Part shown: piece by piece, positions 1 to 51,033 of the stretch
How positions within the stretch are numbered: the stretch's first letter is position 1
Layout of the letters: the number at the start of each line of letters is the position of its first letter
Origin: Macrostomum lignano
Taxonomy: Eukaryota
Direction: 5' to 3'
DNA length: 64,000 nt
NCBI GenBank assembly: GCA_002269645.1
Contig: NIVC01000075.1
Coordinates: forward strand, 195,760-259,759
Position numbers and translations under genes: made by a program
Notes under the pieces: model-generated
Seen by the model: the letters and a program-made list of their open reading frames with translations, nothing else
Database searches by the model: none
Told to the model about the DNA's origin: nothing

Positions 1-411
<411 letters not shown>

Positions 412-1831: not shown

Positions 1832-3252
1832 GGACGAGCTGAAGATGATCACCTCGCCAGAGTCGGACAGAAACCTTTTCATTTTCAACGGCTTTGAGCA
1901 TCTGAAGCCTTGGGCTGAAAAATTCTCATCGCGGCTCTGCATGGAGTTGAAGCCTCCGAGCCCGAAGTTGTGCGACGCTGATGTTCAGTTAATGTCAATC
2001 TCGCCCTGCAAGTCTGAGAAAACGCAATCCTCTACAGTAAAATTCAAGTACAACACTGCTAAAAAGTGCATTAAGCGTTTTAGAAACGAGATCAATACAG
2101 GTTGCAGTAAGTTTCATTCTAGCGTTTTCATTTTATTCTAATCTTCTTAAAGAGTTGCTCTAAATTTGCTAATGCTACTTCAGAGTTGTTCAACGGTTTT
2201 TTAATCTTTGCAAAAAATCCCAGATAAGACTCTCGGCGAAAAGACACCGGAGCTTCAAACATCAGCGGTCATGGATTCATGGGACTGCAGTGCTAGCTAA
2301 TGCTAAAACACTGAGTGCACCTTCCTCAGTTGAGCTTACAAAATGCACTTAAACGCCGAACCAAACTTGCAGAGACCACCCGCGTCGACCCGATTGACGG
2401 CAGCGACCACCTGGAAGGCGAGTCTTGGACCAACATGTGCCACGAGTTCCGCTGCGATTCGAGCGGCAATACAATCCTGCCAACCTCAGTTAAGAGTAAG
2501 TTTCTGAGCACAGCTCTTCGTCCCTTCCAGCGCCGCACTAATTCGCCTCAGTCACTGCATGTCTGCCAGCCCTCTCTCAGTCACTGCATGTCTGCCAGCC
2601 CTCTCTCAGTCACTGCATGTCTGCCAGCCCTCCCTCAGTCACTGCATGTCTGCCAGCCCTCCCTCAGTCACTGCATGTCTGCCAGCCCTCCCTCAGTCAC
2701 TGCATGTCTGCCAGCCCTCCCTCAGTCACTGCATGTCTGCCAGCCCTCCCTCAGTCACTGCATGTCTGCCAGCCCTCTCTCAGTCACTGCATGTGTGCCA
2801 GCCCTCCCTCAGTCACTGCATGTCTGCCAGCCCTCTCTCAGTCACTGCATGTGTGCCAGCCCTCCCTCAGTCACTGCATGTCTGCCAGCCCTCTCTCAGT
2901 CACTGCATGTCTGCCAGCCCTCTCTCAGTCACTGCATGTCTGCCAGCCCTCCCTCAGTCACTGCATGTCTGCCAGCCCTCCCTCAGTCACTGCATGTCTG
3001 CCAGCCCTCCCTCAGTCACTGCATGTCTGCCAGCTCTCCCTCAGTCACTGCACCCGGCCAGCTCCGCAACAATCCAGTTGCTAGGCCGTCCACCACTCGC
3101 CCATTCCAGAATGCGTTGCTGCCGACTTCAGCTGCAAGCCGATTGGCGCGGCGCCGTTTCGCTGCAGAAACATCGACGGCGAGAAGAGAGAAAACTGCCA
3201 GTGCATCGACAAGGACGGCGAGGCCATGCTGGTGGTCGACAACCCCAACTGA
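1832..3252 (+). CDS. g0: last three exons (1832-2106, 2373-2495, 3110-3252) of the secreted double-vWA / Cys-rich protein; 5' part is upstream of the window
   Basis: AG/GT sites with matching phases. Exon sizes 275/123/143 nt are identical to g2. The terminal exon reads CVAADFSCKPIGAAPFRCRNIDGEKRENCQCIDKDGEAMLVVDNPN*. Confidence 0.85.
2547..3052. repeat. 29-bp minisatellite (CTCAGTCACTGCATGTCTGCCAGCCCTCC)n, ~17 units, intron 6 of g0
   Basis: Period 29 read directly; lies between donor 2496 and acceptor 3109. Confidence 0.97.
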
Positions 3253-3849
3253 CAGGCAGACAGTCAGCTGATTGGTATCGCGGCCCTCGAATCAAGCTGG
3301 AATAATCGGTGGCTTGCTGTGTGAAAGAAGGACTTGTCCGTTAACAGTCGAAGTTACTTGTTGATCTGATGTTTATATACTTATGAGCAGCCCCTGATGC
3401 GTCTCATCACACCTTTATAAAATTTATTAGTCTGTGTTTTGTGTTGGCTTTATTATTAATCGCCAATTAATTCTGCTTCTCATCTACACCGAATCGATGC
3501 GTCTCAAAACTCAAGCAATCGAACCTCTGTTATTAACTTAGCCTGAATGCTGTGCGCCTGATGCGACTACAAATCGAATTACAAATGTATCTAAGCTTGA
3601 GAAAAAACCGGACCGATTAAATGGAAAGTTTTGCACAATACCGAAAAATTATTTATATATTAGTGCTTGTTACTTTGCATCAGCTGTAAACTATGGTATC
3701 GAAAGTTTAACTACAAAACCACATTGAGACTTTTAGAATTCAGAATTTTAGTGCAATGGGTAAGTCAAAACTTGAGTTATCTCTTGCTTTGTTTGTCTTT
3801 GGCAAAAGCTACTTTCAGTGTTACTGAAACGCGTCTATGGAGGATTCTC

Positions 3850-4446
3850 TATGCCGCGAGTTCTCGGAGGGCGTCGACGAACTGGCTGACTGGCTCACCT
3901 GGCATCTGGGAACGCGACTTGAGCTTGTAGCGGTTGCTGATTGTGCTGTGCGACTGACCGAAGATCGTTGTCAGTGCAGCCACCAGCTTGTCAAACGTAT
4001 CAACGCTCGTCGTGGCAGATTCCTCAGCGCGTAGACTCTCTGGCCTTCCTCGCCTAGCAGATGAACGAGAATCGCCTTCTTGCGTGCATCCGATGCTTCT
4101 TTTAGGTCCAAGGCCTCCAGGTAGATCTTGAATCCTTCGATCCAACGATTCTAAGGCGTGTGTAGCTGTCCTGGGTGGGCGAGAAACACGCGTGGCTCGG
4201 AAATGCTCAGACTCGTCGCCATGTTGTACCTTGAGGCAGCATGGCTAAATGAATAAGATGCGAGAAGCGATTTCAAAGCCAAAGTTCAAAGTCACAAAGC
4301 CTTGAAAAGCCGGTGCGCACTTATATTGTAATTAAAAGCATGATTCAGCAAACACCAAACCCCCCACCCGGCGAGGCCGGTCTGGGCAGACGGACACCCC
4401 CCAGCCAATCAGAACGCGAGCACTCCCAACCGGCGTAAGCCGCATA
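3850..4446 (-). mobile_element. Ty3/gypsy LTR retrotransposon relic: LTR + PBS + degenerate gag 5' end
   Basis: On the minus strand the LTR ends ...TACAACA and is followed directly by PBS-like TGGCGACGAG (4221-4212). Gag-like peptides WNRWIEGFKIYLEAL..RKKAILVHLLGEEG and RYKLKSRSQMPGEPVSQFVDALRELA are broken by a stop and frameshifts. Confidence 0.8.
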
Positions 4447-5872
4447 CAAGGACTACTTAACAACTTAGGACGCTACACTCGCAAATGGTAGAAATTCTAG
4501 AAAAGGCCGCTTGATTTGGCTGTCTATGGTTTTTTAATAAGCCTTTTGGATAAAGAAGCAAGTACTAAGTGATAGATACGAGTAATTATAAAAGTTTTGC
4601 GCTATAATAATTATTTTTACAGTTATACAAACAATAAATATATGCAAATATTCCCAGCATAAGAATTGTAAATGACAATTGAAAAGTACGATATGCAACG
4701 AACCGGAAAACTCCGGACATAACTGTATAAGGAAAACATAGACGGCTATAACAAAGTTTGAAAATATACAGGTGTTTGAAAGAAACATTCAGCTAGGCTT
4801 CAGTTTGCGGAGTCAGCGAGAGCAAACGGTGGTTGATTGTCTGGACGTCTCGGAATCTCTGCGCACCATGCCTTTATAGATGGAGTTGGCCAGTCTTCGA
4901 GACACTCCATGCAGCAGATCTCGGTCCAGTTGAACATCAAAAAAATTTCGAAGATTTTCTCAAATACAAGCACGGAACTGCTAACACAACGCTGCCCAGA
5001 ACCAAGAGAATGGGCATAACAGAAGCAGGCAAAGACAACTAACCATTCAGGCGAATGGCTCAGTTTCCCTCGAGATACAAGCAGTGGAAGTATCCAGACC
5101 AGGCAAACTTGTTGCAATTGTTCGGTCAGGCAAATTTTCTTTGTGGGAAACGTAGCCACAAATGTAGTAAAGAGAGGCTTTCTTCGGTAGAAATTCGAGC
5201 AACGGATAAACTTAGCTCGTCAAAACTGACAGTCTCTTCATCGGTGACATCATGCTGACAACATGCTGATGGCGAGTGATCTGGTGGCGAAGCGTGAAGT
5301 TGCGCATAGAGCTGTATGCGGCGGAGGCGAGCACTAGCCATAATCTGATCCACTGATATGTAATAGCAGCCTCCATGACCTTGACGATAAATTTTTACAA
5401 GCACATCGCGCCGATACGCCAAGACTGTGAAGTCGCTCTTAACTCGAACGGAGGACTTAACAGTGCGCTCATGAATGAGCAAAAAATCGACTCGCAAATC
5501 CTGACATTTGAACAATCCAGCCTCCGGAGGTAACAAAATCCAGGCTTAAAGCTGACATAATGAATAGTGCCCACGAGACAACTCTGTCGACAGCATTGAA
5601 GGCAGTCAATTCATCAGGGGCCCTAGCTCTGTCGACTAACAGCACACCTCGCCGACCAGCATCTCTAGAGCGTCCTAAAATATTTGAAACAGGCTGATAC
5701 AACTTAGTAAGTAAACTAAGTACACAACCATTCATACTTACTTGAGACAGTCTGACGCAGGGAAGTCAATGAAAAATCTTTAAAGATTGCGGGTGGGTCG
5801 ATGGGGCGCGCGTGTATGGCGGTTAATACGTTTCAGTGGTGCATTTTCAGGCCAGTGATTTTTGCAAACTCC
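4447..5872 (-). mobile_element. P-superfamily DNA transposon relic, truncated (one TIR only)
   Basis: Starts CAAGGACTACTTAACAAC after GCCGCATA. Matches the complete copy at 39016-40917 up to position 40461. Transposase-like fragments RQGHGGCYYISVDQI and VSRGKLSH. Confidence 0.75.
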
Positions 5873-6099
5873 TTAATTACCCCCGCGGTAGAGCTTTTCC
5901 CTAGGCTGATCCCAGGCGAAACTAGCTCTCTCCCCCAACAACAACAAAAGCCATCTATACTAATAGCAGACCAGCATTTCGAGCATGGATCGGGCCCCAT
6001 GAACATCTGCATTATAGCAGAAATTTGATTTGCACAGAAACTACTCAATTACGAGCTACTTTCACTGTCAATTTAAAGCTCAGAATTCAAGTACAAAGG

Positions 6100-6324
6100 G
6101 TATGTAAAAACTTTAGTTGTTTATGGCAGTAAATATTTTACTTGCTTAGGTACGGTGAGACGCGTTTCTGTAACACTGAAAGGAGCTTTTGCCAAAGACA
6201 AACGAAGCAAAGGCTTCAATATAAGTACGAAAGTCAAAGGGACCAGCTTAAGCGATACTTCATAGAGTTTTAGCTGTGAAAGAAAAGCGTAGCTTACACT
6301 TGAATAATCAGCTCACAAATCGAA
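6100..6324 (+). promoter_or_regulatory. Conserved upstream block of the vWA genes with a TATA-like TATAAG (6220-6225)
   Basis: The block is conserved upstream of g1, g2, g3 and g4. TATAAG lies ~100 nt before the ATG. Function is inferred from position only. Confidence 0.45.
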
Positions 6325-9300
6325 ATGCTCTCCAACACTTATCCAAGATGCTGGAAGGTTCTTTCTGTCATTGCTCTCTTAATACTGGTGCATCAGATTG
6401 AGCTCAGCTGCTCGACAAGCCCCTGCATCAACCTTGACTTGGTGGTCGCAGTGGACACATCGTCTTCATGCTCTCAAACACAGTTCGACAGGCTGCTCTC
6501 AGATGTGAAGGCCTTGGTCTCTAAATTTCCAATCGGTCCGACAAAAACTCGACTGGCTCTGATCGGCATGTCGCAGACTGCGCAGGTTCTCGCCAACTTC
6601 GACGACGTGATGTCTCTGTCGGACTTCAACTCCGCGGTCGACAGGCTGACGATGAGTTCCGAACGAGCCGAAATCTCGAAGGGCGTCAAGCTGGCTCGAG
6701 AATCCGTACTCAACAAGGCCAGGGCTGCTCCGACTCCAAGACTCTTAGCTCTGGTGAAGGACAGGCAGTGCGCTGAGAGAATAACGGGATCGAGCGACGC
6801 GGAACTGGCTTCGATTAAGTCGGAAGTCGCAGTCCTGAAGTTGACGGGAAACGCAGTGCACGCAATCGGAATCGGTGGATTGTGGAACAGGTGATTAAAT
6901 TTTATTGTTTTTTCTTTAGCTCACATACAATTTGTTTTCATAGCTATATATAGTTTCAGTTGATGCCTGAACCCTGAAAGTCTTTATAGCACAGTTTTAT
7001 CATCCGTTAAAAAGCAACTTTTTTTAATAATGGTGCAGCCAGAAAGTTTATTTGAAGGATAAACCAACCCCACCCACTGAGAGAAACGACGTCGAAACGA
7101 CGTCGTCCCGCACAACGTGATGTTTTTACATCGCATGTATGTCGCAATGTCGTATTGATGCCGTATTCATTTTCATGTAGTATTCGTGCCGTGGCAGGCA
7201 ATTTTTCTCTTTCATTCGTTAAATTACTTTTTCGTTTGAACACGAACAGTACTAACTTAAAAAACGACAAAAAACGATAACAGTATGTCGTGGAATTCTT
7301 TGTAGCATTTAGAAGAGCATGAGATTGAAATCGCGCCAAGGCGTGTAAGAAAGTAAAGCAACAACTGTCTTTTAGCAACTGTCTATGGTTAAAACTGCGG
7401 TGATATCACTAGAAAACTAGAAGGGGTACGAAGAAAATAATTTATAAGTCCTCTTAAGTTTTTAGTCAGCTACTGCTCAAAAACATACAATTATATTCAA
7501 CGACATGACTGGTCGCCCTGCAGAACCTTCATTTAAAGTACCCCCTGGGCAAGTGCGTCCCGCACTGGAGCTGTGCAACATTAATTTCACAATGCGGGAG
7601 CTCGCTCGCCTTGGCGCGATTTCAATTTCATGCTTTTCTGAATGCTACGAAGGTTTCCACGACATGCTGTTATCTTTTTTGTCGTTTTAAGTTAGTACTG
7701 TTCGTGTTCAAACGAAAAATATATTTTACGAACGAAAGAGGAAAATTGCCTCGTGGCCTTAAATGCTATTTTAATCTATCTGCTGTTACTAAAGGTTGGT
7801 TGGAAGTTTCCTAAACCATAAAAGAAACTATCAAATACAAGTAGAATAGCTTGAAATATTTCTTTGCTAGAAAAAGATGGCTAAGGGCATCATTATTTAA
7901 ACTTCACTCGAACTCAAAATTACATGTAAAATGATAGACAAGCACACGATAGATAAATAATCAGCGGTCCCAGTGCGTGACAACGATTGTCTGGCGAGCA
8001 AGATTGTCCGCCGGTAGCGCGAGCCATAGACAATCGTTGTCACGCACTGCGACCGCTGATTCTTTGCATTGTTTTTCTGTTTGACGATCCTACAGACAAT
8101 GCATTGTTTGTAGTATGGATTGTTCTGCATTAAAATGTGAATAATGATCGTCGAATTGCTAAACAATGAACTTCTCTATGGGGAAATCACATAGAAAGTT
8201 GTAGAAAAACCGGTAAATTCCATTATTGTATAAGTATTAAAGTGAGTAAAGGAGTGTAGGTAAGATAGGCTAATCGTGTTTAAATATAATTGCACGCGAC
8301 TAACCGCGGAAGATGAATTACGAAAATATAAAATTTATATAATTTTCCCAGCTGACAGAATTAAACATAACAATGGTAAAAAGATAAAAATAGAGAAAAA
8401 TAGACAGACAGGAGGCGAGAGGAGACAGAGAGGAAAAATTTTGGTAACAGTAACAGTGATATTAGTAAACTAACTGCATATAAAATGAGAGACTTAGATA
8501 ACAGGGCACAATGAGATATTACCATAAGTATTATAGATTAGCTATGAACATATTGCACTGCAAAAGAAAACAGTGGCGCAACCAGGGGGGGGGGGGGCGG
8601 GGGCGCGGTGGCGGTCGCGCCCCCCTTAGGCGGAGATCCAAAAAAATCAAAGGGGGGAACAGAGCCACCCCTCCCGGGACTTTATCCTCCAGAATCCGAC
8701 CCCCCTCAAAAGTTTCTGGTTGCGCTACTGAAAGAAAAAGGAAAACTTTTTTTCGAAGACGGCTGTGAAGAAGGCGAAGAAAAAGCTCAGTTAATAAGAC
8801 ACAGCGAGCATTTTGTAAACTACACCTTTTCGCGTTCTATTTCGATAAAACTGCATTCAATTTCGGCAAACTCGCTTTCATTTTCGGCATCAGCTAATAG
8901 ACCATAGCCCATAGACCTAATTGGTTGTCAACCAAGGTATTGCAGTGACGAAGACAGACTAGGAGAATCGGCAGCGGGTGACAGGTAAGGATGCTGCGGT
9001 TGATGACAGGATATTTACTATGAGAACTGGAGTAACAGGTGGATCTTGCAAGTGGAAAACATCACATTGGAAAGCAATGCGGGCATGGCGACTGCAATGG
9101 CAGGGACTTGAGGAGCATGGATTTGCGTGGTTGAAGAGGATCCAACATCTGGACTGTGATGCGAAGAGAACAATTAGAGGAGAGAAAAGATTTGACCTGG
9201 AAGAGTGTGGCACCTGGGCAGCTTGCAGTGCATTGCTATTGTTGCGTCACTGTTCCACTTCATTCCTTCTCGCAAGTCGCTGATTCGCATCTAGCAGGTA

Positions 9301-12300
9301 CTGACCAATGCATGCCCCAATGGCTGCATCTGTCATTTGGGTGCTGATATCATTTCTGAAAAAAGTGATATTTAAAAGGCCTGCCTGTATACCGCTATGA
9401 ATTTTTCCAGCCAAATTTCTCTATTCTTTTCAAATTAGCATGTCAAAGAGTGTATGCTTTACAAATGTGACAGCTTAATATGTGGAAAAATTAATGTTTA
9501 TTAAATAGATAGTGTCATTAGAAGAAGTAAACTACTTATCAATGATACCAATGACCAATGAACAATGACCAATAGATAGATGTTGATTTTTTTGCTGTCC
9601 TAGACGAGAAGGGGTGGTTGTCTATTTTATCGCCCTTACATGAGATGGCAGTAAGTATTGCATTGGCTAGCTAATTTTAAATATAATTATAAGAGCATTA
9701 TGTATGAATACGAGCGTAGATACGAGCGTATAGTAGATGTTGATCTAAGGGGATAGGCTATATTTTTGTCCTAAAAGCCCCGTAACGACAACTACTTCCG
9801 TAAGTGTCCTCCGCTCTCACAAACATCTATTGGATGTTGGGCACTAAAGTACTTGGCGGGCCAGGGACCAGGGACTTGCACCCAGCATTTGTGCGAGCGT
9901 AGTTTTGGCACTCAAGTTGAACACCCATTTGTGGCTTAGTACCTAGAATAGCTTATTTAAACTTAAATTCGATTGTATAAGTGGGTTGAATTACATCCTG
10001 ACATAGTGGATAATATAACATGATGATTTAGCTCGCATCTTGTCGGCAAAATAAATTTTAGCCACGAACTGAAGGCCATTTTTGGAACCAACTACCTGCT
10101 CTTCAAGAACACAAACAAGGCTATGGAGTCCGCCAAGTCGCTAAACAACAAAGTTTGCCCGAAGCCAGCCTGCAAAAGCTCGGGTCGGACTGTGAAGCGT
10201 GAAACTTGCTTTGGAAAGTCGCAGCACGTATTAACGGTAAACGACAGTGCTTTCACTTCATCTGGCATGGAAGTCTGCAGACAGCAGATTGCTCGATCAT
10301 TTCAGTCTTGCGGTGAGTTACTCCATTTGCTGATTTCTTTCTCTCTGAGGGCTCAATTTTTACTCAAACGCAAAGACTTCTTGGGCCTTAGGGTTGGAAA
10401 AAATGAAAAGTTTTCTGATTTGCATAAAATTCCCAGTATACTTGTACGAGCGTAAATTGCAAATATGAGTAGTTTAACATGTACTTGAAGTAGAAAGTAA
10501 ACCAGCACACGAGGCACTACTAATAAAGGCGGACCATTAACTGTCTTGTCATTTAGTTGGTCTATTAGTTAATTTATTGCGGTTCACGTATATTACAGTG
10601 CAATTTTGAAGACGCGTTTGCCCACAAAAGTACTTCTTGTGGTGATACGAGCTATTGTCAACAGATTTTTATGGAAAGAATGACTGGATAGGCAAGGACC
10701 CTAGAGGCAAGGATGAGGCCAGAACAGAGTGCCCCTAAGCCGAGGTATCATCTAGGCCTGGAAGTGACTCTGGCCCAATATCGTTTGATCAACTAGACTG
10801 TCCGAGTTAACTGTGAAACTATGTGAACGAAATTCCGGGTCGGGGCAGCTTTAAAAACTGGACACTGCTTCGTAACAGCCGCTTGCTCTTTTGATGCAAC
10901 GAAGTATAAACAGCTATTTTTAGGTACTGTTAGCACCAAAGTGTCCTGTGACAGCGTTGGCGCGGTACTGGTAGGTGAAAACCCGCTAAAGAGTTGCGAG
11001 ATAGAGGTGCTGAAGGCCGAGCTCCGTGTGCCTTGTGTACTCTCTTCCCGGATCGTACCCGCTGAGCACGCTGCGTGGTTGTAACATCAGAATGTCATCT
11101 ATCCACTGAATCAGCTACAAATAAGCACGTTTACTGTTCCGACTGGCTGAACGCGCGAGAATCTCTTCCCGAGCGCTGTACCGAAACTTATGGCCTAATG
11201 GCCTTGGTGGGCGACAGCCCTTGTCTAGGTTCACCCTCTCCCGACTTTCCACTTTGGCGAGCTCTCCTGGCCCTCCAGTTTGGCCCTTGCCTAGGTTCAC
11301 CATCTCCCGACTTTCCACTTTGGCGCTCTCCTGGCCCTCCAGTTTGGCCCTTGCCTAGGTTCACCATCTCCCGACTTTCCACTTTGGCACTCTCCTGGCC
11401 CTCCAGTTTGGCCCTTGCCTAGGTTCACCATCTCCCGACTTTCCACTTTGGCGCTCTCCTGGCCCTCCAGTTTGGCCCTTGCCTAGGTTCACCATCTCCC
11501 GACTTTCCACTTTGGCGCTCTCCTGGCCCTCCAGTTTGGCCCTTGCCTAGGTTCACCATCTCCCGACTTTTTACGATCGATTACAACTTTTACTGTCCGC
11601 CTGTTGTAAACTTTATCTCTGTAATAACTCACGCGGACTCCACTGGTTGAGTAAGTTAGAACTTCTCGAGAAAAACTTGAGCGACTGCTAGTTAGCGCAC
11701 GCGTATATATATATTTAATAGGCACGACGTACATTAGTACACACGATACACGTACACGCGAGGAAGAACAATTAATGATGTGCATATACGAGCTACTTAA
11801 GCAAAGTCAACGTTCCCACGCAACCCTACACCCTCAAGCAACCTCAGATCAGTCCAGTGGCACTTTGTTACAATCTTAAGTGTTAGTTTATTCTTAGCCA
11901 CGAGCTAATTTGTCCCACTAGCAATTGGACACCTGTGGTCTGATGAAACTCAATTTAAAGAAGCACTGGTTAAAAGTTTACGGTAACGTGCTTATTTTGC
12001 GTAGCTGCTATTTAGAAGCTCTTAACAGTCGACCACTGGTTATAAATCACTAGTAAAACATTGCTTTTCAAGGTGGGATGAGAGAAGAAAGCTACGGGGT
12101 CAGGTCAGTCTAGAACAGAAAGCAGCATGCATGTGTTTTTTTTACCTCGGGATAAAACATAGAACTCGAGCGTACAGTAGTGTAGTAATGAGTTGAAACT
12201 CATTTGGCCCTAAACTACGGCGAGATGTAGCGAATGTAAAGTTTACAGCGTTAGGCTGATGTCCTAGCGAATATTCTTGATCTGCGAATAATCCCGAGAA

Positions 12301-15300
12301 ACACGTTGCTATGATATGCAACACCTGATATTACTTGCTAACTCTTTAAATTGCACTACGCTCGTAATGCTTCCAGTAAGCTCACAACGAAATTCATTCT
12401 TCACTAAGACTGCTCCAAAACCAGGTAAAAACATTATCTAAACATTTGCCGTTTCCAGTCGAGAAGCAGTCCTGCAGCAAGATAGAGCGTACAGTACAGT
12501 ACTAGCGTACAGTACTTTTAAAACACCACAGCGCCCTGTGACAGCCCACACAGTACCGCTGCCCTCACGGTGCCCCTAAATTCACGCCCCCACCCTAATC
12601 TTGCGGTGTTCCCACCCACACAGCGCACCTACCTCAACTATACCATACCAAACCACTAATTGCATATCTACTTTCACTTTCATCTATTTACAATCATTGA
12701 TGTTGAAATAAAGTCATATATATAATCAATTTATATACAATAAGGCAACACTGGAGTAAAGTACACCAGCAAACACTTGCAGCCGAGAAACATTCCTGCT
12801 ACAAGATGGAGCGAAGCATTGGCTCATGCCAAGCTGACGGCAATTCGGAAATCGTTGAGACGCTGCAGTTTCTCGACCGAAAGAAACAGTCGTGCGTGAC
12901 ATATGAGGAGAAGCACAAAGTGAATTGCTGTAAGTTTCCTGTTCTTCCAATTAATGCCAGTCAGTCAGCCAGTCAGTCACTCATTCGTCAATTAGCCAGT
13001 CAGTCAGTCAGTCAGTCAGTCAGTCAGTCAGTCAGTCAGTCAGTCAGTCAGTCAGTCAGTCAGTCAGTCAGTCAGTCAGTCAGTCAGTCAGTCAGTCAGT
13101 CAGTCAGTCAGTCAGTCAGTCAGTCAGTCAGTCAGTCAGCCACTCACTCACTCAAGTCAGTCAGTCAGTCAGTCAGTCAGTCAGTCAGTCAGTCAGTCAG
13201 TCAGTCAGTCAGTCAGTCAGTCAGTCAGTCAGTCAGTCAGTCAGTCAGTCAGTCAGTCAGTCAGTCAGTCAGTCAGTCAGTCAGTCAGTCAGTCAGTCAG
13301 TCAGTCAGTCAGTCAGTCAGTCAGTCAGTCAGTCAGTCAGTCAGTCAGTCAGTCAGTCAGTCAGTCAGTCAGTCAGTCAGTCAGTCAGTCAGTCAGTCAG
13401 TCAGTCAGTCAGTCAGTCAGTCAGTCAGTCAGTCAGTCAGTCAGTCAGTCAGTCAGTCAGTCAGTCAGTCAGTCAGTCACTCACTCAGTCAGTCAGTCAG
13501 TCAGTCAGTCAGTCAGTCAGTCAGTCAGTCAGTCAGTCAGTCAGTCAGTCAGTCAGTCAGTCAGTCAGTCAGTCAGTCAGTCAGTCAGTCAGTCAGTCAG
13601 TCAGTCAGTCAGTCAGTCAGTCAGTCAGTCAGTCAGTCAGTCAGTCAGTCAGTCAGTCAGTCAGTCAGTCAGTCAGTCAGTCAGTCAGTCAGTCAGTCAG
13701 TCAGTCAGTCAGTCAGTCAGTCAGTCAGTCAGTCAGTCTGCAAGGATGTCTATTTTCCAGTCAGAGCAAGCGAGTGCAAAGATCAAGTCGCAGATGTGGT
13801 GATAATGCTGGATAAATCCTATAGCATTCGTAGTCACTACAGCACTGTTGTGAACTCAGCGAAGGCAATAATCCTGTCGCTAAACATTGGAGAGAGAAAT
13901 GTTCGGATTGGCGTGCTATCCTTCAATGGCTATTCGTCTTACTCAGGATCAAAACGGCATGTGAAGCATCTGCTAGAAATGCTTGTAAACCTTGGCGATG
14001 AGTTCGACGTCTTCGAAATTATAGGAAAGGTTGACGAAAGCAAGACTTTAGAAGAGTTTCGGGACACGCACACTGGTTTCGCCCTCAAAGAAGTCAAGAA
14101 GCTTTTCAACTCAAAAGGCCGAAGAAACGTTTTCAAAGCCGTCGTTATCATCACGGATGGTAGGAGCAACGACGCCAAAGAACTGTTTCAAGCAGTGTCG
14201 GATATAAAAAACGACGATGTCACGCTGTATGCGGTAGGAGTCGGCGACCCGTACGACTTAGATTTGTGAGCCTCTTTGTTAAGATCTTATTTTTAGTTTG
14301 TTCTTTAAATTAGATAGAAGATATTAGCACCAATGGTTGGCTGAAAAGTATACAAATCATATACATGTAAAAATATTAAATACCACGGTGTCACTCTTTA
14401 TGGCACAGTAGTCGACAGCCAATTTGACGTGAACCAGCGAGCCACTTTATATGTCTTATTTCTATACTGCTTTAAAATGCGTATGAAAAGTTTAAAGCAG
14501 TATGAAGTGAGTTATTATTTCACACCAAGGACACCTGTTTGTAGTGGACTTATAAATATATAAGACAACTCTCCTTTGCTCCAATGAAGGGGTAAATTTA
14601 GCACTGAACTAGAAATCTGCGCCCCACATTAATTTTTAAAGCCTTCAATCATTAAGTTATTAAGACAACTGTCCAGACTAAGATATCAGATCCCCTATGA
14701 GCTTTGGCTCAAAGCATCTGTGAAACCCCCATGAGCCAAAGGATTTAAGCCATTCCCAAATGAGCTTTGGCATTTCAGCGATCTTCTCACGAACCAAGAC
14801 AATTAGGGGGCTAGCTTTCCGGGGGGGGGGTTCGAGGGGGGTTTAGGATATCAGCAATCCTTCCATGAGCCTCAGCATGTAAACAATTCCCCTAAGCCGC
14901 AGAGTTCAAGCGATTTCCTTCATGAGCCTATGAGTATCTATGATTATAGAGCGATACCTCTATAAACATTTACTGATTAGCAGGGTGATTCTCTTAAGGT
15001 TGAACCCTAACCCTGAGCCTAATACCCCTATCCTAAGCACTAACTCTAAACCTGCTGAAAGTCACAGCAGTTTAGTCATTCTTCCAGGAGCCAAAAAAGT
15101 TCAGCAATCAGCACGTTAAGTTTTGGTATGTCAGCGATTCTCTATGAGACTAAAGACTCAGAATTTCACATATCCCACCTCTATGAGCCCTGACTATTCA
15201 GTGTTGTGTACTTGTACTTTGTACTTCTTTGTTTATGGCCCTCCCCGTGCGCCTTTGATTTATTTTATAAATGCGATAAGTGTGCCGTGCTCATAGCAAC

Positions 15301-16985: not shown

Positions 16986-17770
16986 CAGGCAGACAGACAG
17001 CGGATCCGAATCGCAGCCCTCGAATCAAGCTGGATTAATCGGTGGATTGCTGTGTAAAAGAAGGACTTGTCCGTTAATAATAGTCGAAGTTACATGTTGA
17101 TCAGATATTTGTTTATGAGCAGCCTCTGATGCGTCTCATCACACCTTTATAAAATTTATTAGTCTGTGTTTTGTTTTGGTTTTGTTACTAATTGTCAATT
17201 AATTCTGCTGCTTCTCATTTACACCGAATCGATGCGTCTCAAAACACAAGCAATCAGACATCTGTTATTAACTTAGCCTGAAAGTTATGCGCCTGATGCA
17301 ACTACAAATCAAATTATCTAAGCTTGAGAATAAACCGGAATGATTAAATGGAAAGCTTTCTCTGATACCGAAATAAGATATATGTATTAGTGCTTGTTAC
17401 CTTGCAATAGCTGTAAACCATTGTATCGAAATTTTAACTTGTAAAAAAGCCACATTGAATTGTATTTTAGAATCCAGATTTTTTGTGCAAAAGGAAAGTC
17501 AAAACTTTAGTTGTCTATGGCAGTGAATATTTTACTTGCTCAGAAGCCCCGTGTACAGTTACAGTGAGACGCTTTTCAATAACGCAGAAAGGAGCTTTTG
17601 CCAAAGACAAACGAACCAAAGGCTTCAATATAAGTACGAAAGTCAAGGGACCAGCCAAGGACAACAAGGATCAAGTTGTCCTTGGACCAGCTAAAGCGAT
17701 ACTTTATAGAGTTTAGGCTGCGAAAGAAAAGCGTAGCTTACACTTAATAATCAGCTCTGCACAAATCGAG

Positions 17771-24734
<6,964 letters not shown>

Positions 24735-45529: not shown

Positions 45530-48500
45530 ATGCTCTCCAACACTTATCCAACAAGATGCTGGAAGGTTCTGTCTGTCATTGCTCTCTTAATACTGGTGCA
45601 TCAGATTGAGCTCAGCTGCTCGACAAGCCCCTGCATCAACCTTGACTTGGTGGTCGCAGTGGACACATCGTCTTCATGCTCTCAAACACAGTTCGACAGG
45701 CTGCTCTCAGAGGTGAAGGCCTTGGTCTCTAAATTTCCAATCGGTCCGACAAAAACTCGACTGGCTCTGATCGGCATGTCGCAGACTGCGCAGGTTCTCG
45801 CCAACTTCGACGACCTGACGTCTCTGTCGGACTTCAACTCCGCGGTCGACAGGCTGACGATGAGTTCCGAACGAGCCGAAATCTCGAAGGGCATCAAGCT
45901 GGCTCGGGAGTCCGTGCTCAACAAGGCCAGGGCTGCTCCGACTCCAAGACTCTTAGCTCTGGTAAAGGACAGGCAGTGCGCTGAGAGAATAACGGGATCG
46001 AGCGACGCGGAACTGGCTTCGATTAAGTCGGAAGTCGCAGTCCTGAAGTTGACGGGAAACGCAGTGCACGCAATCGGAATCGGCGGATTGTGGAACAGGT
46101 GGTTCGGTTTTGTTAATACTGTCTTTTGCTACAAAAGCAAGCTACCATCAAAGCTATGTTCTAAATTCAGTTGAGATTCCTGAATTTAAAATAGGTTAAA
46201 GTTGTTTAGTGCTTGGCTGTTCATGTATACAGCAAGAGGGATAGAAACTGCGTCTCTAAGGTTTCTGTGACAGTCCATCTGTTGGTGTGGCAGCTCTTGA
46301 TGGTTTGGTAGCGTTCGACCATCCACAGATAGTCGTCCTCTCTCTAGGTTGATGGGCACTAAAGCACTTGGCGGCGGGGCAGTGCGTGCATTTGCAGTTT
46401 TGGCACACAGGTTCAACACCAATTTGTGACCCACAGTAGCTTCATTAAGCTACAATACGATTTTATAACTGGCTGATATTACATTATAATACCAGCTAAT
46501 TGTGGAAGATATGACAAAATGATGTAGCTCTCCACTTTGAATTTTAGCCGGGTACTGAAAGCCATTTTCGGAACCAGCTACCTGCTCTTCAAGAACAATA
46601 ACAAGGCTATGGAGTCCGTCAAGTCTCTGAACATTAAAATGTGTCTTCCACCAACCTGCAAACACTCGGGGCAGACGGTAAAGCCTGAAACTTGCTTTGC
46701 AAAGTCGCAGCATGTACTGACGTTCAATGTTGCTGGCGCTTTCACCTCGTCTAAGATCGGAGTCTGCAGACAGCACATCGCGAGATCATTTCAGTCTTGC
46801 AGTGAGTTACTCCATTTGCCGATTTATCTATCTCTTACGGCTTCTTTTTCATTTGAAAACAGAGACTTCCTGTCTCTGCAAGTTGGAAGTATTTTTATTT
46901 AAATGCAAAATTTACAGTAAACTTGTTGGGGCATCAAAATTAACAACTTGATGCCGAAAATGTACAAACCTAATCTTGTGGCATTTATGGAGTTGCAATA
47001 TGTTTTATTAAAATTATATTCAGCTTATAAGGTTGTTGTTGTAAAATGCAGAACGTATTCTCACTTGAGCAGGACTCAAGGTTCTTTTTATGAAGTATTG
47101 ATATTGACCGTCTTGCCATCGATTTTTGCTACTACTTAGTTTATTGCACATCACGTGTACTACAATGCATTGTGACCCCTTTTTAGCCACCAAAAGTACT
47201 TCTTGTGATGATATAGTCATCACAAGATGGTCACTTGATGGAAGCTGGTAGATTTATATGGTAAAAATGACTGGAGAGGCAAGGCTCCAAAAGGCAAGGA
47301 TGAGGCTTTATGGTTCTGCCTCTCCTCTAAAGTACTGTTAATTTCTACAGATATTAGTTTTGTTGACTTTTGAAATTGCACTTATGCTTCCGGTAAAATC
47401 ACAACAAATTTTTTATTCACTAAGACTACCTCAAAAACCAGGTAGAAAACTTGAAATTAACATTTGCCCTCTCCAGCCGAGAAGCAGTCCTGCAGCAAGA
47501 TGGAGCGAAGTCTTGGTTCATGCCAAGCTGACGGCAAGTTGGCCATTCTGGAGACGCTGCAGTTCTTCGACCGAAAGAAACAATCATGCGTGACATATGT
47601 AGAGAAGCACAAAGTGGACTGCTGTGAGTTTCCTGTTCTTCCAATAATTGTCAGTCAGTCAGTCAGTCAGTCAGTCAGTCAGTCAGTCAGTCAGTCAGTC
47701 AGTCAGTCAGTCAGTCAGTCAGTCAGTCAGTCAGTCAGTCAGTCAGTCAGTCAGTCAGTCAGTCAGTCAGTCAGTCAGTCAGTCAGTCAGTCAGTCAGTC
47801 AGTCAGTCAGTCAGTCAGTCAGTCAGTCAGTCAGTCAGTCAGTCAGTCAGTCAGTCAGTCAGTCAGTCAGTCAGTCAGTCAGTCAGTCAGTCAGTCAGTC
47901 AGTCAGTCAGTCAGTCAGTCAGTCAGTCAGTCAGTCAGTCAGTCAGTCAGTCAGTCAGTCAGTCAGTCAGTCAGTCAGTCAGTCAGTCAGTCAGTCAGTC
48001 AGTCAGTCAGTCAGTCAGTCAGTCAGTCAGTCAGTCAGTCAGTCAGTCAGTCAGTCAGTCAGTCAGTCAGTCAGTCAGTCAGTCAGTCAGTCAGTCAGTC
48101 AGTCAGTCAGTCAGTCAGTCAGTCAGTCAGTCAGTCAGTCAGTCAGTCAGTCAGTCAGTCAGTCAGTCAGTCAGTCAGTCAGTCAGTCAGTCAGTCAGTC
48201 AGTCAGTCAGTCAGTCAGTCAGTCACTCACTTAAGTCAGTCAGTCAGTCAGTCAGTCAGTCAGTCAGTCAGTCAGTCAGTCAGTCAGTCAGTCAGTCAGT
48301 CAGCAAGGATGTCTATTTTCCAGCTGGAGCAAGGGAGTGCAAAGATCAAGTCGCAGATGTGGTGATAATGCTGGATAAATCTGGTAGCATTCATAGCAAA
48401 TACCACACTGTTGCGAACTCGGCGAAGACAATAGTCGAGTCGCTAAATCTTGGAGAGAAAAATGTTCGGATTGGTGTTGTTACCTTCAATGGTTTTTCTA

Positions 48501-51033
48501 CTTACGTAAAATCAATAATGGTAGTGACGGATCTGCTAGAAATGCTAGTTGGCCTTGGAGATGAGTTCGACAAGTCGAAAATTCTAACAAAGATTGAAAA
48601 AAGCAGGACTGTGGGGAAGTATAGGAACACACATACTGGTCACGCTCTCAAAGAAGTCAGGAAGCTTTTCAACTCCAAAGGGCGAAAAAACGTTTTCAAA
48701 GCTGTCGTTATCATCACGGATGGTTCAAGTAATGATGCCGAAGTACTGTATCAAACAGTATCGGAAATAAAAAACGACAATGTCACGCTGTATGCGGTAG
48801 GAGTCGGCAAAGTGACAAACTACGAACTGTGAGCTTTTATTGTGATCTGTTTTTTTATTTGGGTTCTTTACCTATTGCAACGGGTTTCCCTAACTAGATG
48901 GAATTAGCTGAAGTTGCGGTTTTGGTCGATAAAAAATGGGCACCAAGGCTGCTGGTTGTAGGTAACGTAATTATAAAATTCTAGAAATCATCCACATGTA
49001 TCAACCAACAAAAACGACGGTGTCACTCTTTATGGCAAAGTAGCCAATAGTGGATTCTACATGAATCATTGTGTTCTATTCTATACTTTTCTATTCTAAA
49101 CTGCTGCTGTAAGTTTTATAGAATAACTTGATTGAAACTTATGGTGAGTTATCAAGCCACACCAAGGACAGATGGTTTTAGAGGACTGATAAATGATCGA
49201 GCTTCCTGGGTTGCTGGCTCAAACCTTGTGTAAATCCTACTGCAAAACATAAAAATATTAAGTTTAGCTCATGGTGCTAAATTTACCCGCTCACGGAAAA
49301 AAGGAGTTTGGTGACCCTGTGACCCCTGTGTATGAAATGAGGAGGTTTTTAGTTCAGGAAACCTAACAAGGCTGGACACTGTACAGTTTAAGTGCTCATA
49401 GCAACAACACAACATCTTGCAACAACAGGCGCGAGCTAAATTTGATCACATCGCCAGAGTCCGATAAAAACCTTTTCGTTTTTGAAAAGTTTGAGCAGCT
49501 GAAGCCTTGGGCTGAAAAATTCTCACAGCGGCTCTGCATGGAGTTGAAGCCCCCGAACCCGAAGTTCTGCGACGCCGATGTTCAGTTCAAGTCCATCTCG
49601 CTCTGTCGGTTCAGAAAAATGCATATTAATATGGTAAACTTCAAGTACGACACTTCTAAAAGGTGCATCAAGCATTTCAAAAGCGAGATAAGTGAAACTT
49701 GCAGTAAGTTGCTCAAAAGTTTCTAAATGTAAACCAAGAGTTGTTCAAGAGTTTTTTGATCTTTCGCAAAAAAGTCCCGGATAAGAGTCTCGGCGAAAAG
49801 ACACCAGAGCTTCAAACATCAGCACTCATGGGACTGTTATGCTTGCTAATGCTAAAACACTGAGTGCACCTTCCTCAGTTGAGCTTACACAATGCACTTA
49901 GACGCCGAACCAAACTTGCAGAGACCACCTGCGTCGACCCGATTGACGGCAGCGACCACCTGGAAGGCGAGTCTTGGACCAACATGTGCCACGAGTTCCG
50001 CTGCGATTCGAGCGGCAATACAATCCTGCCAACCTCAGTTAGGAGTAAGTTTCTGAGCACAGCTCTTCGTCCCTTCCAGCGCCGCCCTAACTCGCCTCAG
50101 TCACTGCATGTCTGTCAGCCCTCTCTCAGTCACTGAATGTCTGCCAGCACTCCCTCAGTCACTGCATGTCTGCCAGCCCTCCCTCAGTCACTGCATGTCT
50201 GCCAGCCCTCCCTCAGTCACTGCATGTCATTCAGCCCTCCCTTAGTCACCGCATGTCTGCCAGCCCTCCCTCAGTCACTGCATGTCTGCCAGCCCTCCCT
50301 CAGTCACTGCATGTCTGCCAGCCCTCCCTCAGTCACTGCATGTCTGCCAGCCCTCCCTCAGTCACTGCATGTCTGCCAGCCCTCCCTCAGTCACTGCATG
50401 TCATTCAGCCCTCCCTTAGTCACTGCATGTCTGCCAGCCCTCCCTCAGTCACTGCATGTCTGCCAGCCCTCCCTCAGTCACTGCATGTCTGCCAGCCCTC
50501 CCTCAGTCACTGCATGTCTGCCAGCCCTCCCTCAGTCACTGCATGTCTGCCAGCCCTCCCTCAGTCACTGCATGTCTGCCAGCCCTCCCTCAGTCACTGC
50601 ATGTCTGCCAGCCCTCCCTCAGTCACTGCATGTCTGCCAGCCCTCCCTCAGTCACTGCATGTCTGCCAGCCCTCCCTCAGTCACTGCATGTCTGCCAGCC
50701 CTCCCTCAGTCACTGCATGTCTGCCAGCCCTCCCTCAGTCACTGCATGTCTGCCAGCCCTCCCTCAGTCACTGCATGTCTGCCAGCCCTCCCTCAGTCAC
50801 TGCATGTCTGCCAGCCCTCCCTCAGTCATTGCATCCGGCCAGCTCCGCAACAATCCAGTTGCTAGGCAGTCCACCACTCGCCCATTCCAGAATGCGTTGC
50901 TGCCGACTTCAGCTGCAAGCCGATTGGCGCGGCGCCGTTTCGCTGCAGAAACATCGACGGCGAGGAGAGAGAAAACTGCCAGTGCATCGACAAGGACGGC
51001 GAGGCCGTGCTGGTGGTCGACAACCCCAACTGA
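45530..51033 (+). CDS. g4: secreted double-vWA Cys-rich protein, ~671 aa; exons 45530-46098, 46548-46801, 47477-47623, 48324-48828, 49429-49703, 49922-50044, 50891-51033
   Basis: Exons sum to 2016 nt and the frame is open. This is the most compact copy. vWA2 reads DKSGS..THTG..ITDG. Confidence 0.88.
47650..48303. repeat. (CAGT)n microsatellite, intron 3 of g4
   Basis: Direct reading. Confidence 0.98.
50096..50832. repeat. 29-bp minisatellite, ~25 units, intron 6 of g4
   Basis: Direct reading. Confidence 0.97.

What the first reader, a model, noticed from the sequence alone, without database searches (positions are those of the whole stretch)
1832..51033. Tandem array of at least 5 secreted double-vWA / Cys-module proteins: candidate diversified recognition or adhesion family
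Seen: the same 7-exon gene (signal peptide, vWA1, 4Cys, 4Cys, vWA2, 4Cys, VWC-like tail, ~670 aa, no transmembrane segment) recurs head-to-tail. Each copy has its own ATG, signal peptide and stop, and the g1-g2 spacer is only 785 bp. The ORF track hides this because exons are split by micro/minisatellites. Established: vWA domains with a DxSxS..T..D MIDAS bind ligands through a divalent cation (integrin I-domains, matrilins, collagen VI). Inference: an expanded, secreted, sequence-diversified vWA family fits self/non-self recognition, reproductive (gamete or seminal) proteins, mucus or glue, or innate immunity. I do not recognise this architecture as a named family.
Basis: partly seen in the sequence, partly recalled or inferred. 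Interest (0 to 1): 0.8.

Follow-up and report, generated by a model that had tools for sequence, protein, structure and literature searches.

The report
Tandem secreted double-vWA gene array
A flatworm (Macrostomum lignano) scaffold carries a head-to-tail array of five copies of an uncharacterised, lineage-restricted gene for a secreted, cysteine-rich protein with two von Willebrand A domains. The first domain is kept almost identical between copies, while the second, metal-binding one has diverged strongly.

Summary
Window 1832-51033 holds five + strand copies of one 7-exon gene, and every intron is GT-AG. Three copies are intact (g2 672 aa, g3 and g4 671 aa). g1 has a 1-bp deletion in an A5 run. 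g0 is only exons 5-7, because an assembly gap lies just left of the window.

The window is Macrostomum lignano scaffold NIVC01000075.1 (Mlig_3_7). The same exon pattern reproduces exactly two transcript-derived GenBank proteins at sister loci.

The protein layout is: signal peptide, vWA1, two 4-Cys modules, vWA2, a third 4-Cys module, and an 8-Cys tail. There is no transmembrane segment. vWA2 has a complete MIDAS (metal-ion-dependent adhesion site). vWA1 lacks the MIDAS threonine. The Cys modules match no Pfam family and no PDB sequence, and no PDB fold for the C-terminal part, so "VWC-like" is unsupported.

Full-length relatives were found only in M. lignano, plus two anonymous transcript contigs.

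Synonymous divergence is mosaic. The promoter, exon 1 and exons 6-7 are homogenised, which indicates gene conversion. vWA2 and exon 5 are old and divergent. Among recent copies vWA2 has an excess of amino-acid changes.

g0/g2 and g1/g3 belong to a 21.5-kb duplication at 98-99% identity that could be an assembly artefact. Three distinct gene types are real in any case.

The tissue and the ligand are unknown. This is a new variant of a known kind, of moderate interest.

The parts
1832..3252 (+). g0: 3' part (exons 5-7: 1832-2106, 2373-2495, 3110-3252) of a g2-type copy. Cut by the scaffold gap left of the window. Has Cys->Arg in exon 6 (KTTRVDP).
   Evidence: Exons 5-7 are 99-100% identical to those of g2.
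6325..16985 (+). g1: A-type copy. Exons 6325-6890, 10062-10312, 12783-12929, 13761-14265, 15324-15597, 15926-16048, 16849-16985. 1-bp deletion (A5->A4) in exon 5 gives a frameshift. 6-bp deletions in exons 4 and 7.
17771..24734 (+). g2: B-type copy, intact, 672 aa. Exons 17771-18336, 19385-19638, 20762-20908, 21009-21519, 23314-23588, 23857-23979, 24592-24734.
27825..37822 (+). g3: A-type copy, intact, 671 aa, 97.8% identical to GenBank Mlig004332.g2 (P0001). Exons 27825-28390, 31561-31811, 34350-34496, 35117-35627, 36688-36962, 37291-37413, 37680-37822.
45530..51033 (+). g4: C-type copy, intact, 671 aa, 95.6% identical to UniRef A0A1I8J873 (P0006). Exons 45530-46098, 46548-46801, 47477-47623, 48324-48828, 49429-49703, 49922-50044, 50891-51033.
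281..16268 (.). First copy of the ~21.5-kb segmental duplication (tail of the B-type gene, 3-kb spacer, A-type gene). Its twin is 21761-37632, at 98-99% identity.
21761..37632 (.). Second copy of the ~21.5-kb segmental duplication.
12958..13738 (.). (CAGT)n microsatellite in intron 3 of g1. Also at 34525-35094 in g3 and 47650-48303 in g4. In g2 intron 3 is only 100 bp and TRF called no array there. It reads as an SQSV repeat ORF that merges exons 3 and 4 in the ORF list.
16099..16785 (.). 29-bp minisatellite in intron 6 of g1. Also at 2546-3052, 24030-24534, 37464-37622 and 50095-50834. Copy number ranges from 5.5 to 25.5.
17520..17770 (+). Conserved ~250-bp upstream region with a TATA-like ATATAAG about 95 nt before the ATG. 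The equivalent region is present before g1, g3 and g4 (87-95% identity).

Best explanation
The locus is a tandem array, in Macrostomum lignano, of a lineage-restricted gene family for secreted proteins of about 71 kDa.

Protein layout (g3 numbering):
- signal peptide;
- vWA1, bracketed by Cys34 and Cys221;
- two 4-Cys modules with spacing C-x9-11-C-x19-22-C-x10-11-C;
- vWA2, bracketed by Cys327 and Cys528;
- a third 4-Cys module;
- an 8-Cys C-terminal tail.

Shown:
- the gene models;
- the secretory layout;
- a complete MIDAS in vWA2, invariant in all paralogs compared, and an incomplete MIDAS in vWA1;
- three divergent gene types (A = g1/g3, B = g0/g2, C = g4) in head-to-tail order.

Inferred from the divergence pattern: the array grows by tandem or segmental duplication. 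Gene conversion or unequal recombination keeps the promoter plus exon 1 (signal peptide and vWA1) and exons 6-7 with their flanks nearly identical among all copies. vWA2 and exon 5 escape this and have diverged. Even among very recent copies vWA2 accumulates mainly amino-acid changes, several next to MIDAS residues.

Inferred mechanism: the proteins are extracellular, divalent-cation-dependent binders. vWA2 is the variable specificity domain. vWA1 plus the Cys tail is a constant framework, for example for assembly, anchoring to a common partner or disulfide-linked multimerisation. The nearest structural relatives of vWA2 are collagen- or matrix-binding A domains (mussel PTMP1, collagen VI, integrin alpha1/alpha2 I domains, VWF A3). 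I therefore favour a matrix or secretion-associated adhesive role over signalling.

The tissue and the ligand are not known.
For: Gene models:
- tblastn and splice sites, all GT-AG.
- The same seven-exon pattern applied to two sister loci reproduces the GenBank proteins P0001 and P0002 exactly. Those GenBank models derive from RNA-seq transcript assemblies (PMC5730564).

Organism and record: window 1-5308 is 100% identical to NIVC01000075.1.

Domains:
- Pfam VWA twice.
- Hydropathy and cysteine map.
- MIDAS residues D339, S341, T426 and D456 are invariant among 8 paralogs. The alignments to TRAP and PTMP1 place them at the motif positions.

Mosaic evolution:
- Nucleotide identity is 95-100% in exons 1, 6 and 7 (93.7-95.1% for exon 7 of g1, which carries a 6-bp deletion), against 63-82% in exons 4 and 5.
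- dS is 0-0.10 against 0.29-0.73.
- Four-fold-site divergence differs among exons, p about 1e-6.
- Non-coding flanks share the high identity: the ~300 bp upstream of the ATG is 87-95% identical, and the block of intron 5, exon 6 and the start of intron 6 is 93.7% identical between g2 and g4.

Variability: vWA1 is 86% invariant and vWA2 26% invariant.

Recent copies: exon 4 Nd:Sd is 10-18: 1-4, against 3-8: 7-18 in the rest of the gene, Fisher p 0.001-0.01.

Structural neighbours: PTMP1 E 1.2e-17, collagen VI, integrin I domains, VWF A3.

Distribution: full-length hits occur only in M. lignano (three clades), plus two intronless anonymous contigs.
Against: - There are no expression, localisation or binding data for any member. 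Text and supplement searches for the gene IDs and for vWA in Macrostomum papers found nothing.
- omega in vWA2 is 0.6-0.75 between types. Its excess over 1 among recent copies is not significant against neutrality (binomial p 0.2-0.4). Relaxed constraint or patchy conversion from other paralogs explains the pattern as well as positive selection does.
- Enrichment of the changes near the MIDAS is not significant (p 0.10).
- The similarity to collagen-binding A domains is generic to the vWA fold (16-25% identity).
- The full-length AlphaFold model is poor outside vWA2 (mean pLDDT 48.5).
- The internal-repeat claim for the three 4-Cys modules rests on spacing and weak hhalign scores (E 0.007-0.01, probability about 5%).
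- g1 is frameshifted and g0 lacks a conserved Cys, so not every copy need be functional.
Confidence: 0.6

Rival explanations
1. Ordinary structural matrix adaptor family, like matrilin, PTMP1 or collagen VI. The proteins bridge collagen or other matrix fibres. The divergence of vWA2 is neutral or relaxed drift after duplication, and conservation of the ends is a by-product of gene conversion. No recognition or arms-race function is involved.
For: The best sequence and fold neighbours are collagen-binding A domains and the two-vWA byssal protein PTMP1. Pairwise omega in vWA2 is below 1 between types. omega above 1 among recent copies is not significant.
Against: - No EGF, coiled-coil, collagen triple-helix or LCCL parts were found.
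- The family is restricted to one lineage rather than conserved, which is unusual for core matrix components.
- The N:S ratio is strongly and significantly higher in vWA2 than in the rest of the gene among recent copies.
Confidence: 0.3
2. Diversifying recognition or reproductive family. vWA2 is under diversifying selection because it binds a variable partner, such as mate-derived, microbial or self/non-self ligands. Gene conversion preserves a constant framework.
For: Constant ends with a variable core that keeps its MIDAS invariant. Nd:Sd of 10-18: 1-4 in vWA2 among copies that are about 97-99% identical. Changes at positions 342, 425, 427, 430 and 458, next to MIDAS residues. Lineage restriction and copy-number and arrangement differences between scaffolds.
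Against: No expression data. The statistics are compatible with relaxed constraint. Some of the 'recent' differences resemble other paralogs (g1 shares a 2-aa deletion and RxTHTG with g4), which suggests micro-conversion rather than new mutations.
Confidence: 0.2
3. The five-copy count is partly an assembly artefact. The 21.5-kb duplication (g0/g2 and g1/g3) would be two haplotypes or homeologs laid in tandem. The true array in one haplotype would then be three genes, B-A-C.
For: - The two units are 98-99% identical over about 16 kb, including introns and spacers.
- The same scaffold has an N gap at the window edge. Beyond the gap lies an inverted, 97-98% identical copy of the A-type gene with the small neighbouring gene and the Tudor gene.
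- A second scaffold shows yet another arrangement.
- The genome paper reports duplicated copies in the annotation: 66,777 transcriptional units that collapse to 33,715 at 95% identity. M. lignano's duplicated genome is otherwise my own recollection.
Against: The two units differ by a frameshift, in-frame indels, minisatellite copy number (23.7 vs 5.5 repeats) and 11 amino-acid changes in exon 4, and they are joined without a gap in the window. Even if this reading is true, three clearly distinct paralogs in tandem remain (dS up to 0.7).
Confidence: 0.35

Closest known systems
Macrostomum lignano 'VWFA domain-containing / hypothetical' proteins Mlig004332.g1/g2, Mlig003734, Mlig014655, Mlig025477 (P0001-P0010, P0166), and the distant clades Mlig013408/Mlig006715 (P0019) and A0A1I8JMB3 (P0111)
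   Same: Same seven-exon gene and the same architecture. g3 is 97.8% identical to P0001 and g4 is 95.6% identical to P0006. P0019 aligns end to end at 27% identity with the cysteine framework conserved.
   Different: None of these is characterised or named beyond the domain. g2 has no close annotated counterpart (best 80%). The P0019 clade has the reverse MIDAS pattern: complete in vWA1 and degenerate in vWA2.
Proximal thread matrix protein 1 (PTMP1) of the mussel byssus, PDB 4CN8
   Same: Secreted protein with two vWA domains and a MIDAS. It is the best hit both by sequence (E 1.9e-11) and by fold (E 1.2e-17). From my own knowledge, it binds collagen.
   Different: Only 16-17% identity. In PTMP1 the two vWA domains abut, with no 4-Cys modules and no Cys-rich tail. 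It comes from a different phylum. The similarity is that of the vWA fold in general.
Matrilins (vWA - EGF repeats - vWA - coiled coil)
   Same: Secreted proteins with two vWA domains separated by small disulfide-rich modules and a C-terminal region that could mediate assembly.
   Different: No EGF domain and no coiled coil was detected (Pfam). The C-terminus here is an 8-Cys beta-rich tail. No orthology: the best non-Macrostomum hits are multi-vWA proteins at about 30% identity, over vWA domains only.
Collagen-binding A domains: integrin alpha1/alpha2 I domains, VWF A3, collagen VI N/C domains
   Same: vWA2 superposes with target-normalised TM-scores of 0.75-0.86 and has the full DxSxS..T..D MIDAS.
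   Different: Those are domains of much larger membrane or multimeric proteins. Identity is 17-25%. No collagen-binding residues were tested.
VWC / single-VWC (chordin-like cysteine-rich) domain
   Same: Exon 6 carries C-x-D-P-x-x-G-x-x-Y/H-x-E-G-E-x-W-x3-C-x-x-F-x-C. From my own knowledge this resembles the G..Y..GE.W...C..C.C core of VWC.
   Different: No Pfam VWC hit at E<=10. No PDB sequence hit. No VWC structure appears among the Foldseek matches of a pLDDT-79 model. The only weak hit is Fn1_2 in one member (E 0.014).

Membership tests
vWA (von Willebrand factor type A) domain superfamily | Match to the PF00092 profile above the gathering score, for each of the two domains | tested here: met
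   Exon 1: 73.6 bits. vWA2 exon: 75.1 bits. Cut-off 23.8. Two stretches in P0001, E 3.2e-45. Fold neighbours have target-normalised TM-scores of 0.75-0.86.
vWA domains with a functional MIDAS | DxSxS ... T ... D metal-coordinating residues all present | tested here: met
   vWA2: D339-K-S341-G-S343, T426 and D456. D339, S341, T426 and D456 are invariant in 8 paralogs. S343 is Thr in one paralog. Metal binding itself was not tested.
vWA domains with a functional MIDAS | The same residues in vWA1 | tested here: not met
   vWA1 has D41-T-S43-S-S45 and D146. The Thr position aligns with R114/A115 (SSERAEISKG), invariant in this clade.
Matrilin | EGF-like domain(s) between the vWA domains | tested here: not met
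   No EGF family hit at E<=10 on the inter-vWA segment or on the whole protein.
Matrilin | C-terminal coiled-coil oligomerisation domain | tested here: not met
   The C-terminal 85 residues hold 8 Cys and are predicted beta-rich. No helix lies after the module that follows vWA2.
Cochlin / vitrin | N-terminal LCCL domain before two vWA domains | tested here: not met
   vWA1 begins about 8 residues after the predicted signal peptide. No LCCL hit.
Collagen VI-type chains | Gly-X-Y triple-helical segment flanked by vWA domains | tested here: not met
   No collagen repeat in the 671-aa sequence.
VWC (PF00093) / single-VWC proteins | Profile match or fold match to a VWC domain | tested here: not met
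   No Pfam hit. No PDB profile hit. No significant Foldseek hit (best E 0.12, unrelated folds). Motif resemblance only.
Secreted (classical pathway) protein | N-terminal signal peptide and no other membrane-spanning segment | tested here: met
   A single Kyte-Doolittle 19-residue peak above 1.6 at residues 9-32, and none elsewhere. The C-terminus is hydrophilic. No dedicated signal-peptide predictor was available.
Macrostomum double-vWA / 4-Cys family (unnamed) | Collinear full-length alignment with a conserved cysteine framework: three C-x9-11-C-x19-22-C-x10-11-C modules plus an 8-Cys tail | tested here: met
   g1-g4 are 58-98% identical to P0001-P0010 and 27% identical end to end to P0019. 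The Cys columns of the third module and the tail, which all seven sequences cover, are invariant across the three clades and two anonymous transcripts. The Cys of the first two modules are invariant in their own alignments.
Tandemly arrayed gene family under concerted evolution | Region-specific near-identity among paralogs that extends into non-coding DNA, with heterogeneous synonymous divergence | tested here: met
   dS is 0-0.10 in exons 1, 6 and 7 against 0.29-0.73 in exons 4 and 5. Four-fold-site heterogeneity p about 1e-6. Upstream 300 bp, intron 5/6 and 3' flank show blocks of 87-100% identity.

The most novel reading that the evidence does not exclude
The array encodes a flatworm-specific system of secreted recognition molecules. 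Gene conversion maintains a constant framework (vWA1 plus the Cys tail). A MIDAS-bearing vWA2 is diversified by selection, between paralogs and between haplotypes, to bind variable partners such as mating-partner, microbial or allogeneic ligands. This would be a vWA-based analogue of other variable recognition families, built partly from a previously undescribed 4-Cys module.
Probability: 0.15. Interest if true: 0.8.

Novelty: new variant of a known kind. Interest (0 to 1): 0.45.

Why it matters
vWA domains are among the best understood extracellular binding modules. This family places two of them in a new frame of unclassified 4-Cys modules and an 8-Cys tail.

Its evolutionary pattern is unusually clear. 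One vWA domain is nearly invariant and the other is hypervariable yet still carries a MIDAS, inside a tandem array shaped by duplication and gene conversion.

M. lignano supports transgenesis, and RNAi and in situ hybridisation are in use there. The function is therefore directly testable. If the proteins prove to be glue or mucus components, reproductive proteins or recognition molecules, the array would be a compact model for how a binding domain diversifies while its scaffold is held constant.

If they are plain matrix adaptors, the finding is a useful annotation of an uncharacterised lineage-specific family. It is also a warning about duplicated and inverted segments in this scaffold.

Tried and rejected
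1. Expression and function from the literature.
- Full-text searches for the gene IDs, for 'von Willebrand' or 'VWA' with Macrostomum, for seminal-fluid and prostate papers, for matrix gene names and for single-cell or gland papers found nothing on this family.
- Supplement searches in five papers were also negative.

2. Identifying the Cys modules.
- Pfam at E<=10 on the inter-vWA and tail segments and on all seven tail homologs gave only Fn1_2, E 0.014, in one member.
- A PDB profile search found nothing.
- Foldseek of the tail model found nothing significant.
- hhalign between the three 4-Cys modules aligned the cysteines in register for two of the three module pairs (A4-A5 and A6-A5), but only at E 0.007-0.01 and probability about 5%. 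The A6-A4 comparison did not align them (E 0.085).

3. A tail-only search of the 5.8-billion protein set returned nothing. It did not even recover the known members, so it is uninformative. The profile search with the full alignment recovered only M. lignano members plus generic vWA proteins.

4. The full-length AlphaFold model from 8 close paralogs was poor outside vWA2 (pLDDT 48.5). I did not use it for the Cys modules or for mapping variable sites.

P0001 was used instead.

6. The pseudogene-array reading is rejected. Three ORFs are intact, omega is 0.1-0.4 in most exons, the cysteines and the MIDAS are conserved, and sister copies have transcript-derived models.

7. Coding microsatellites are rejected. 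The SQSV and 29-bp repeat ORFs lie between GT and AG sites, are in frame with the flanking exons only in g1, and are spliced out in the annotated proteins.

8. Rfam and tRNA scans of the window were empty.

Full report
**Source of the window**

The window is eukaryotic. A rough splice of one copy found Macrostomum lignano 'hypothetical / VWFA domain-containing' proteins at 59-74% identity and nothing else. Window 1-5308 is 100% identical to GenBank scaffold NIVC01000075.1 (assembly GCA_002269645.1, Mlig_3_7), positions 195760-201067. So the window is that scaffold from 195760 onward. About 2.76 kb of N lies immediately to its left.

**Checking the observation**

tblastn with the 671-aa protein P0001 shows five collinear sets of hits on the + strand, each set following the same seven segments. 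I fixed every boundary by hand from the sequence. All introns are GT-AG and the phases agree between copies.

| Copy | Span | State |
|---|---|---|
| g0 | 1832-3252 | exons 5-7 only; Arg replaces a conserved Cys in exon 6 |
| g1 | 6325-16985 | frameshift in exon 5; in-frame 6-bp deletions in exons 4 and 7 |
| g2 | 17771-24734 | intact, 672 aa |
| g3 | 27825-37822 | intact, 671 aa |
| g4 | 45530-51033 | intact, 671 aa |

- The g1 frameshift is one base missing from an A5 run (GTTAAAAAGTGC -> GTTAAAAGTGC). It could be a real lesion or a consensus error.
- g0 stops at the (TCTA)n run that abuts the scaffold gap. Its missing 5' half is an assembly matter, not evidence of a truncated gene.
- The (CAGT)n array in intron 3, the 29-bp minisatellite in intron 6 and the 64-bp minisatellite in intron 2 of g1/g3 explain the long repeat-encoded ORFs that obscure the exons in the raw ORF list.

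**Are the junctions real?**

I could not map reads. I applied the same seven-exon pattern to the two sister loci that carry GenBank models (L004 for P0001, L001 for P0002). It reproduced both deposited proteins exactly. Those GenBank models come from a genome-guided transcriptome built from RNA-seq (StringTie plus mapped de novo transcripts, TransDecoder ORFs). That filter probably also explains why g1-g4 themselves have no deposited protein.

g3 is 97.8% identical to P0001 and g4 is 95.6% identical to P0006. Two anonymous homologs sit on short intronless contigs that run uninterrupted through what are four exons here, so they are spliced transcripts from other organisms:
- P0020, from a Logan assembly of SRR30276812;
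- P0058, from JGI sample 3300019095.

**The protein**

- Pfam finds two vWA domains and nothing else, even at E<=10 on the remaining segments.
- The only hydrophobic stretch is N-terminal, residues about 9-32. The C-terminus is hydrophilic.
- There are 28 cysteines at conserved positions (g3 numbering): C29; C34 and C221 around vWA1; C49 and C149 inside vWA1; C327 and C528 around vWA2; three groups of four; and eight in the tail.

| Cysteine group | Positions | Exon |
|---|---|---|
| 4-Cys module 1 | 226/238/261/272 | 2 |
| 4-Cys module 2 | 278/288/310/321 | 3 |
| 4-Cys module 3 | 539/551/571/583 | 5 |
| 8-Cys tail | 587-656 | 6-7 |

- The three 4-Cys groups share the spacing C-x9-11-C-x19-22-C-x10-11-C. 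Profile-profile comparison aligns modules 2 and 3, and modules 1 and 3, in cysteine register, but only weakly (E 0.007-0.01). The module 1-2 comparison did not align them (E 0.085). I treat 'three copies of one module' as likely but not shown.
- vWA2 has the full MIDAS (D339-x-S341-x-S343, T426, D456). D339, S341, T426 and D456 are invariant among eight paralogs.
- vWA1 has DxSxS and the Asp, but Arg/Ala sits where the Thr should be.
- The tail has a VWC-like motif in exon 6. However, Pfam, a PDB profile search and Foldseek on a reasonably confident tail model (pLDDT 78.9; best E 0.12) give no support.
- The full-length model is good only for vWA2. Its best structural matches are the two-vWA mussel byssal protein PTMP1, collagen VI, integrin alpha1/alpha2 I domains and VWF A3. 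This agrees with the sequence search of the PDB.

**Distribution**

An exhaustive HMMER scan of 1.84 billion cluster representatives gave 1821 hits. Only five align beyond the vWA domains:
- P0003, which is this clade;
- P0019, which is Mlig013408/Mlig006715, 27% identical end to end;
- P0111, another M. lignano protein;
- the two anonymous transcripts.

Everything else is generic multi-vWA matrix protein at about 30% identity over vWA domains, for example from lamprey, Argonauta and Capitella. The architecture is therefore restricted, as far as these data show, to Macrostomum and perhaps close relatives.

**Organisation of the array**

- The copies fall into three types: A (g1, g3), B (g0, g2) and C (g4).
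- Window 281-16268 and 21761-37632 are one 21.5-kb unit repeated at 98-99% identity. Each unit holds the tail of a B gene, a 3-kb spacer with gag-like remnants, and an A gene.
- Each complete copy has a conserved ~250-bp upstream region with a TATA-like element.
- Across the N gap, the same scaffold carries an inverted A-type gene (P0001) followed by its own copies of the small gene and the Tudor gene that also follow g4.
- A second scaffold (NIVC01001851.1) has P0004 (+), P0005 (-) and P0002 (+) before the same Tudor gene.
- So the cluster is real and multi-membered. Copy number and orientation differ between scaffolds, and part of that may be mis-assembly of haplotypes or homeologs. Only long reads or depth can decide.

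**How it evolves**

- Nucleotide identity between types is 95-100% in exons 1, 6 and 7 (93.7-95.1% for exon 7 of g1, which carries the 6-bp deletion), but 63-82% in exons 4 and 5.
- Synonymous divergence tells the same story. dS is 0-0.10 in exons 1, 6 and 7, against 0.29-0.73 in exons 4 and 5. Exons 2-3 are low between A and B but high against C.
- Four-fold sites differ among exons with p about 1e-6.
- The high identity extends into the upstream region. The block of intron 5, exon 6 and the start of intron 6 is 93.7% identical between g2 and g4, and the g2 and g3 3' flanks are identical over 150 bp.
- That pattern is the signature of gene conversion or unequal exchange, not of purifying selection alone.
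- At the protein level vWA1 is 86% invariant and vWA2 26% invariant among seven lineages.
- Among the four very recent A-type copies, exon 4 has Nd:Sd of 10-18: 1-4 while the rest of the gene has 3-8: 7-18 (Fisher p 0.001-0.01).
- Several of the changes sit next to MIDAS residues (342, 425, 427, 430, 458). Neither omega above 1 nor the clustering is significant on its own. Some differences look like short conversion tracts from other paralogs.

**Interpretation**

What is shown:
- a lineage-restricted, secreted, disulfide-rich double-vWA family in tandem array;
- a constant N-terminal vWA1 and C-terminal tail;
- a variable vWA2 that keeps its MIDAS.

What I infer is that these are extracellular, cation-dependent binders. 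vWA2 would set specificity. The constant parts would provide assembly or anchoring. The proteins most likely sit in a matrix or a secretion.

Whether they are structural adaptors, glue or mucus components, reproductive proteins or recognition molecules cannot be decided without expression data, and I found none.

**Verdict**

This is a new variant of a known kind: vWA-domain secreted proteins in a new architecture with an interesting evolutionary mode. Interest is moderate rather than high, because the function is still open and part of the copy number may be an assembly effect.

Noticed in passing
window 52742-53606 (+), ORF 53163-53606: Small gene between the array and the Tudor gene, annotated from transcripts at the sister loci (141 and 143 aa). 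It has a signal-like N-terminus, 'LYCGPASPVMIDWLC' (C-x11-C), KKR, a spacer, then KR-'GIHAHVAMSLCCRRMCDARVFC' (CC-x3-C-x5-C). That layout resembles an insulin-like peptide precursor (B chain, C peptide, A chain). Pfam gives no hit, and the last Cys spacing is 5 rather than the usual 8.
   Followed up: partly
left edge of the window; L004 5309-8072 and 10001-29845: About 2.76 kb of N abuts window position 1 in scaffold NIVC01000075.1. Beyond it lies an inverted, 97-98% identical arm: the A-type gene P0001, the 143-aa gene and the Tudor gene. This is either a real inverted duplication or a mis-joined haplotype or homeolog.
   Followed up: partly
window 58067-60491 (+) and onward: A Tudor-domain gene (PF00567, E 2e-08) with long Gln/His/Pro-rich low-complexity stretches. 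Its counterparts at the sister loci are annotated as 1237-1239 aa. It marks the 3' boundary of the array on three scaffold arms.
   Followed up: partly
window 3849-5735, 25331-27203, 38419-40291 (- strand): The 3-kb spacer repeated after g0, g2 and g3 carries broken minus-strand ORFs with weak PNMA / retrotransposon-gag similarity (E 0.0015 and 0.018). It is probably a decayed retroelement that travels with the duplicated unit.
   Followed up: partly
window 40461-45082: A 4.6-kb insertion specific to the g3-g4 spacer. It holds a 548-bp direct repeat (42646-43193 and 43984-44531, 99.8% identical) and minus-strand ORFs without Pfam hits. One ORF ends in '...TGHKNSSSVDVYKRRD', which from my own recollection is reminiscent of tyrosine-recombinase/Crypton-derived domains.
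   Followed up: no
window 12806-14269 (+): In g1 only, exon 3, the (CAGT)n intron and exon 4 form one continuous 487-aa ORF, so intron retention would insert an in-frame (SQSV)n tract. In g3 and g4 the repeat length breaks the frame. Probably coincidental.
   Followed up: no
window 61706-64000: Three minisatellite arrays near the right end of the window: a 22-bp unit at 61706-61915, a 22/89-bp unit at 62333-63094 and a 28-bp unit at 63386-64000. GC content here is 51-56%, higher than over the array.
   Followed up: no
P0019 clade (Mlig013408/Mlig006715), not in the window: In this distant clade with the same architecture the MIDAS pattern is reversed. vWA1 has the Thr (GGKTDF), while vWA2 reads DITRS ... 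no Thr ... LLTSGNS. This suggests the two clades use different domains for metal-dependent binding.
   Followed up: no
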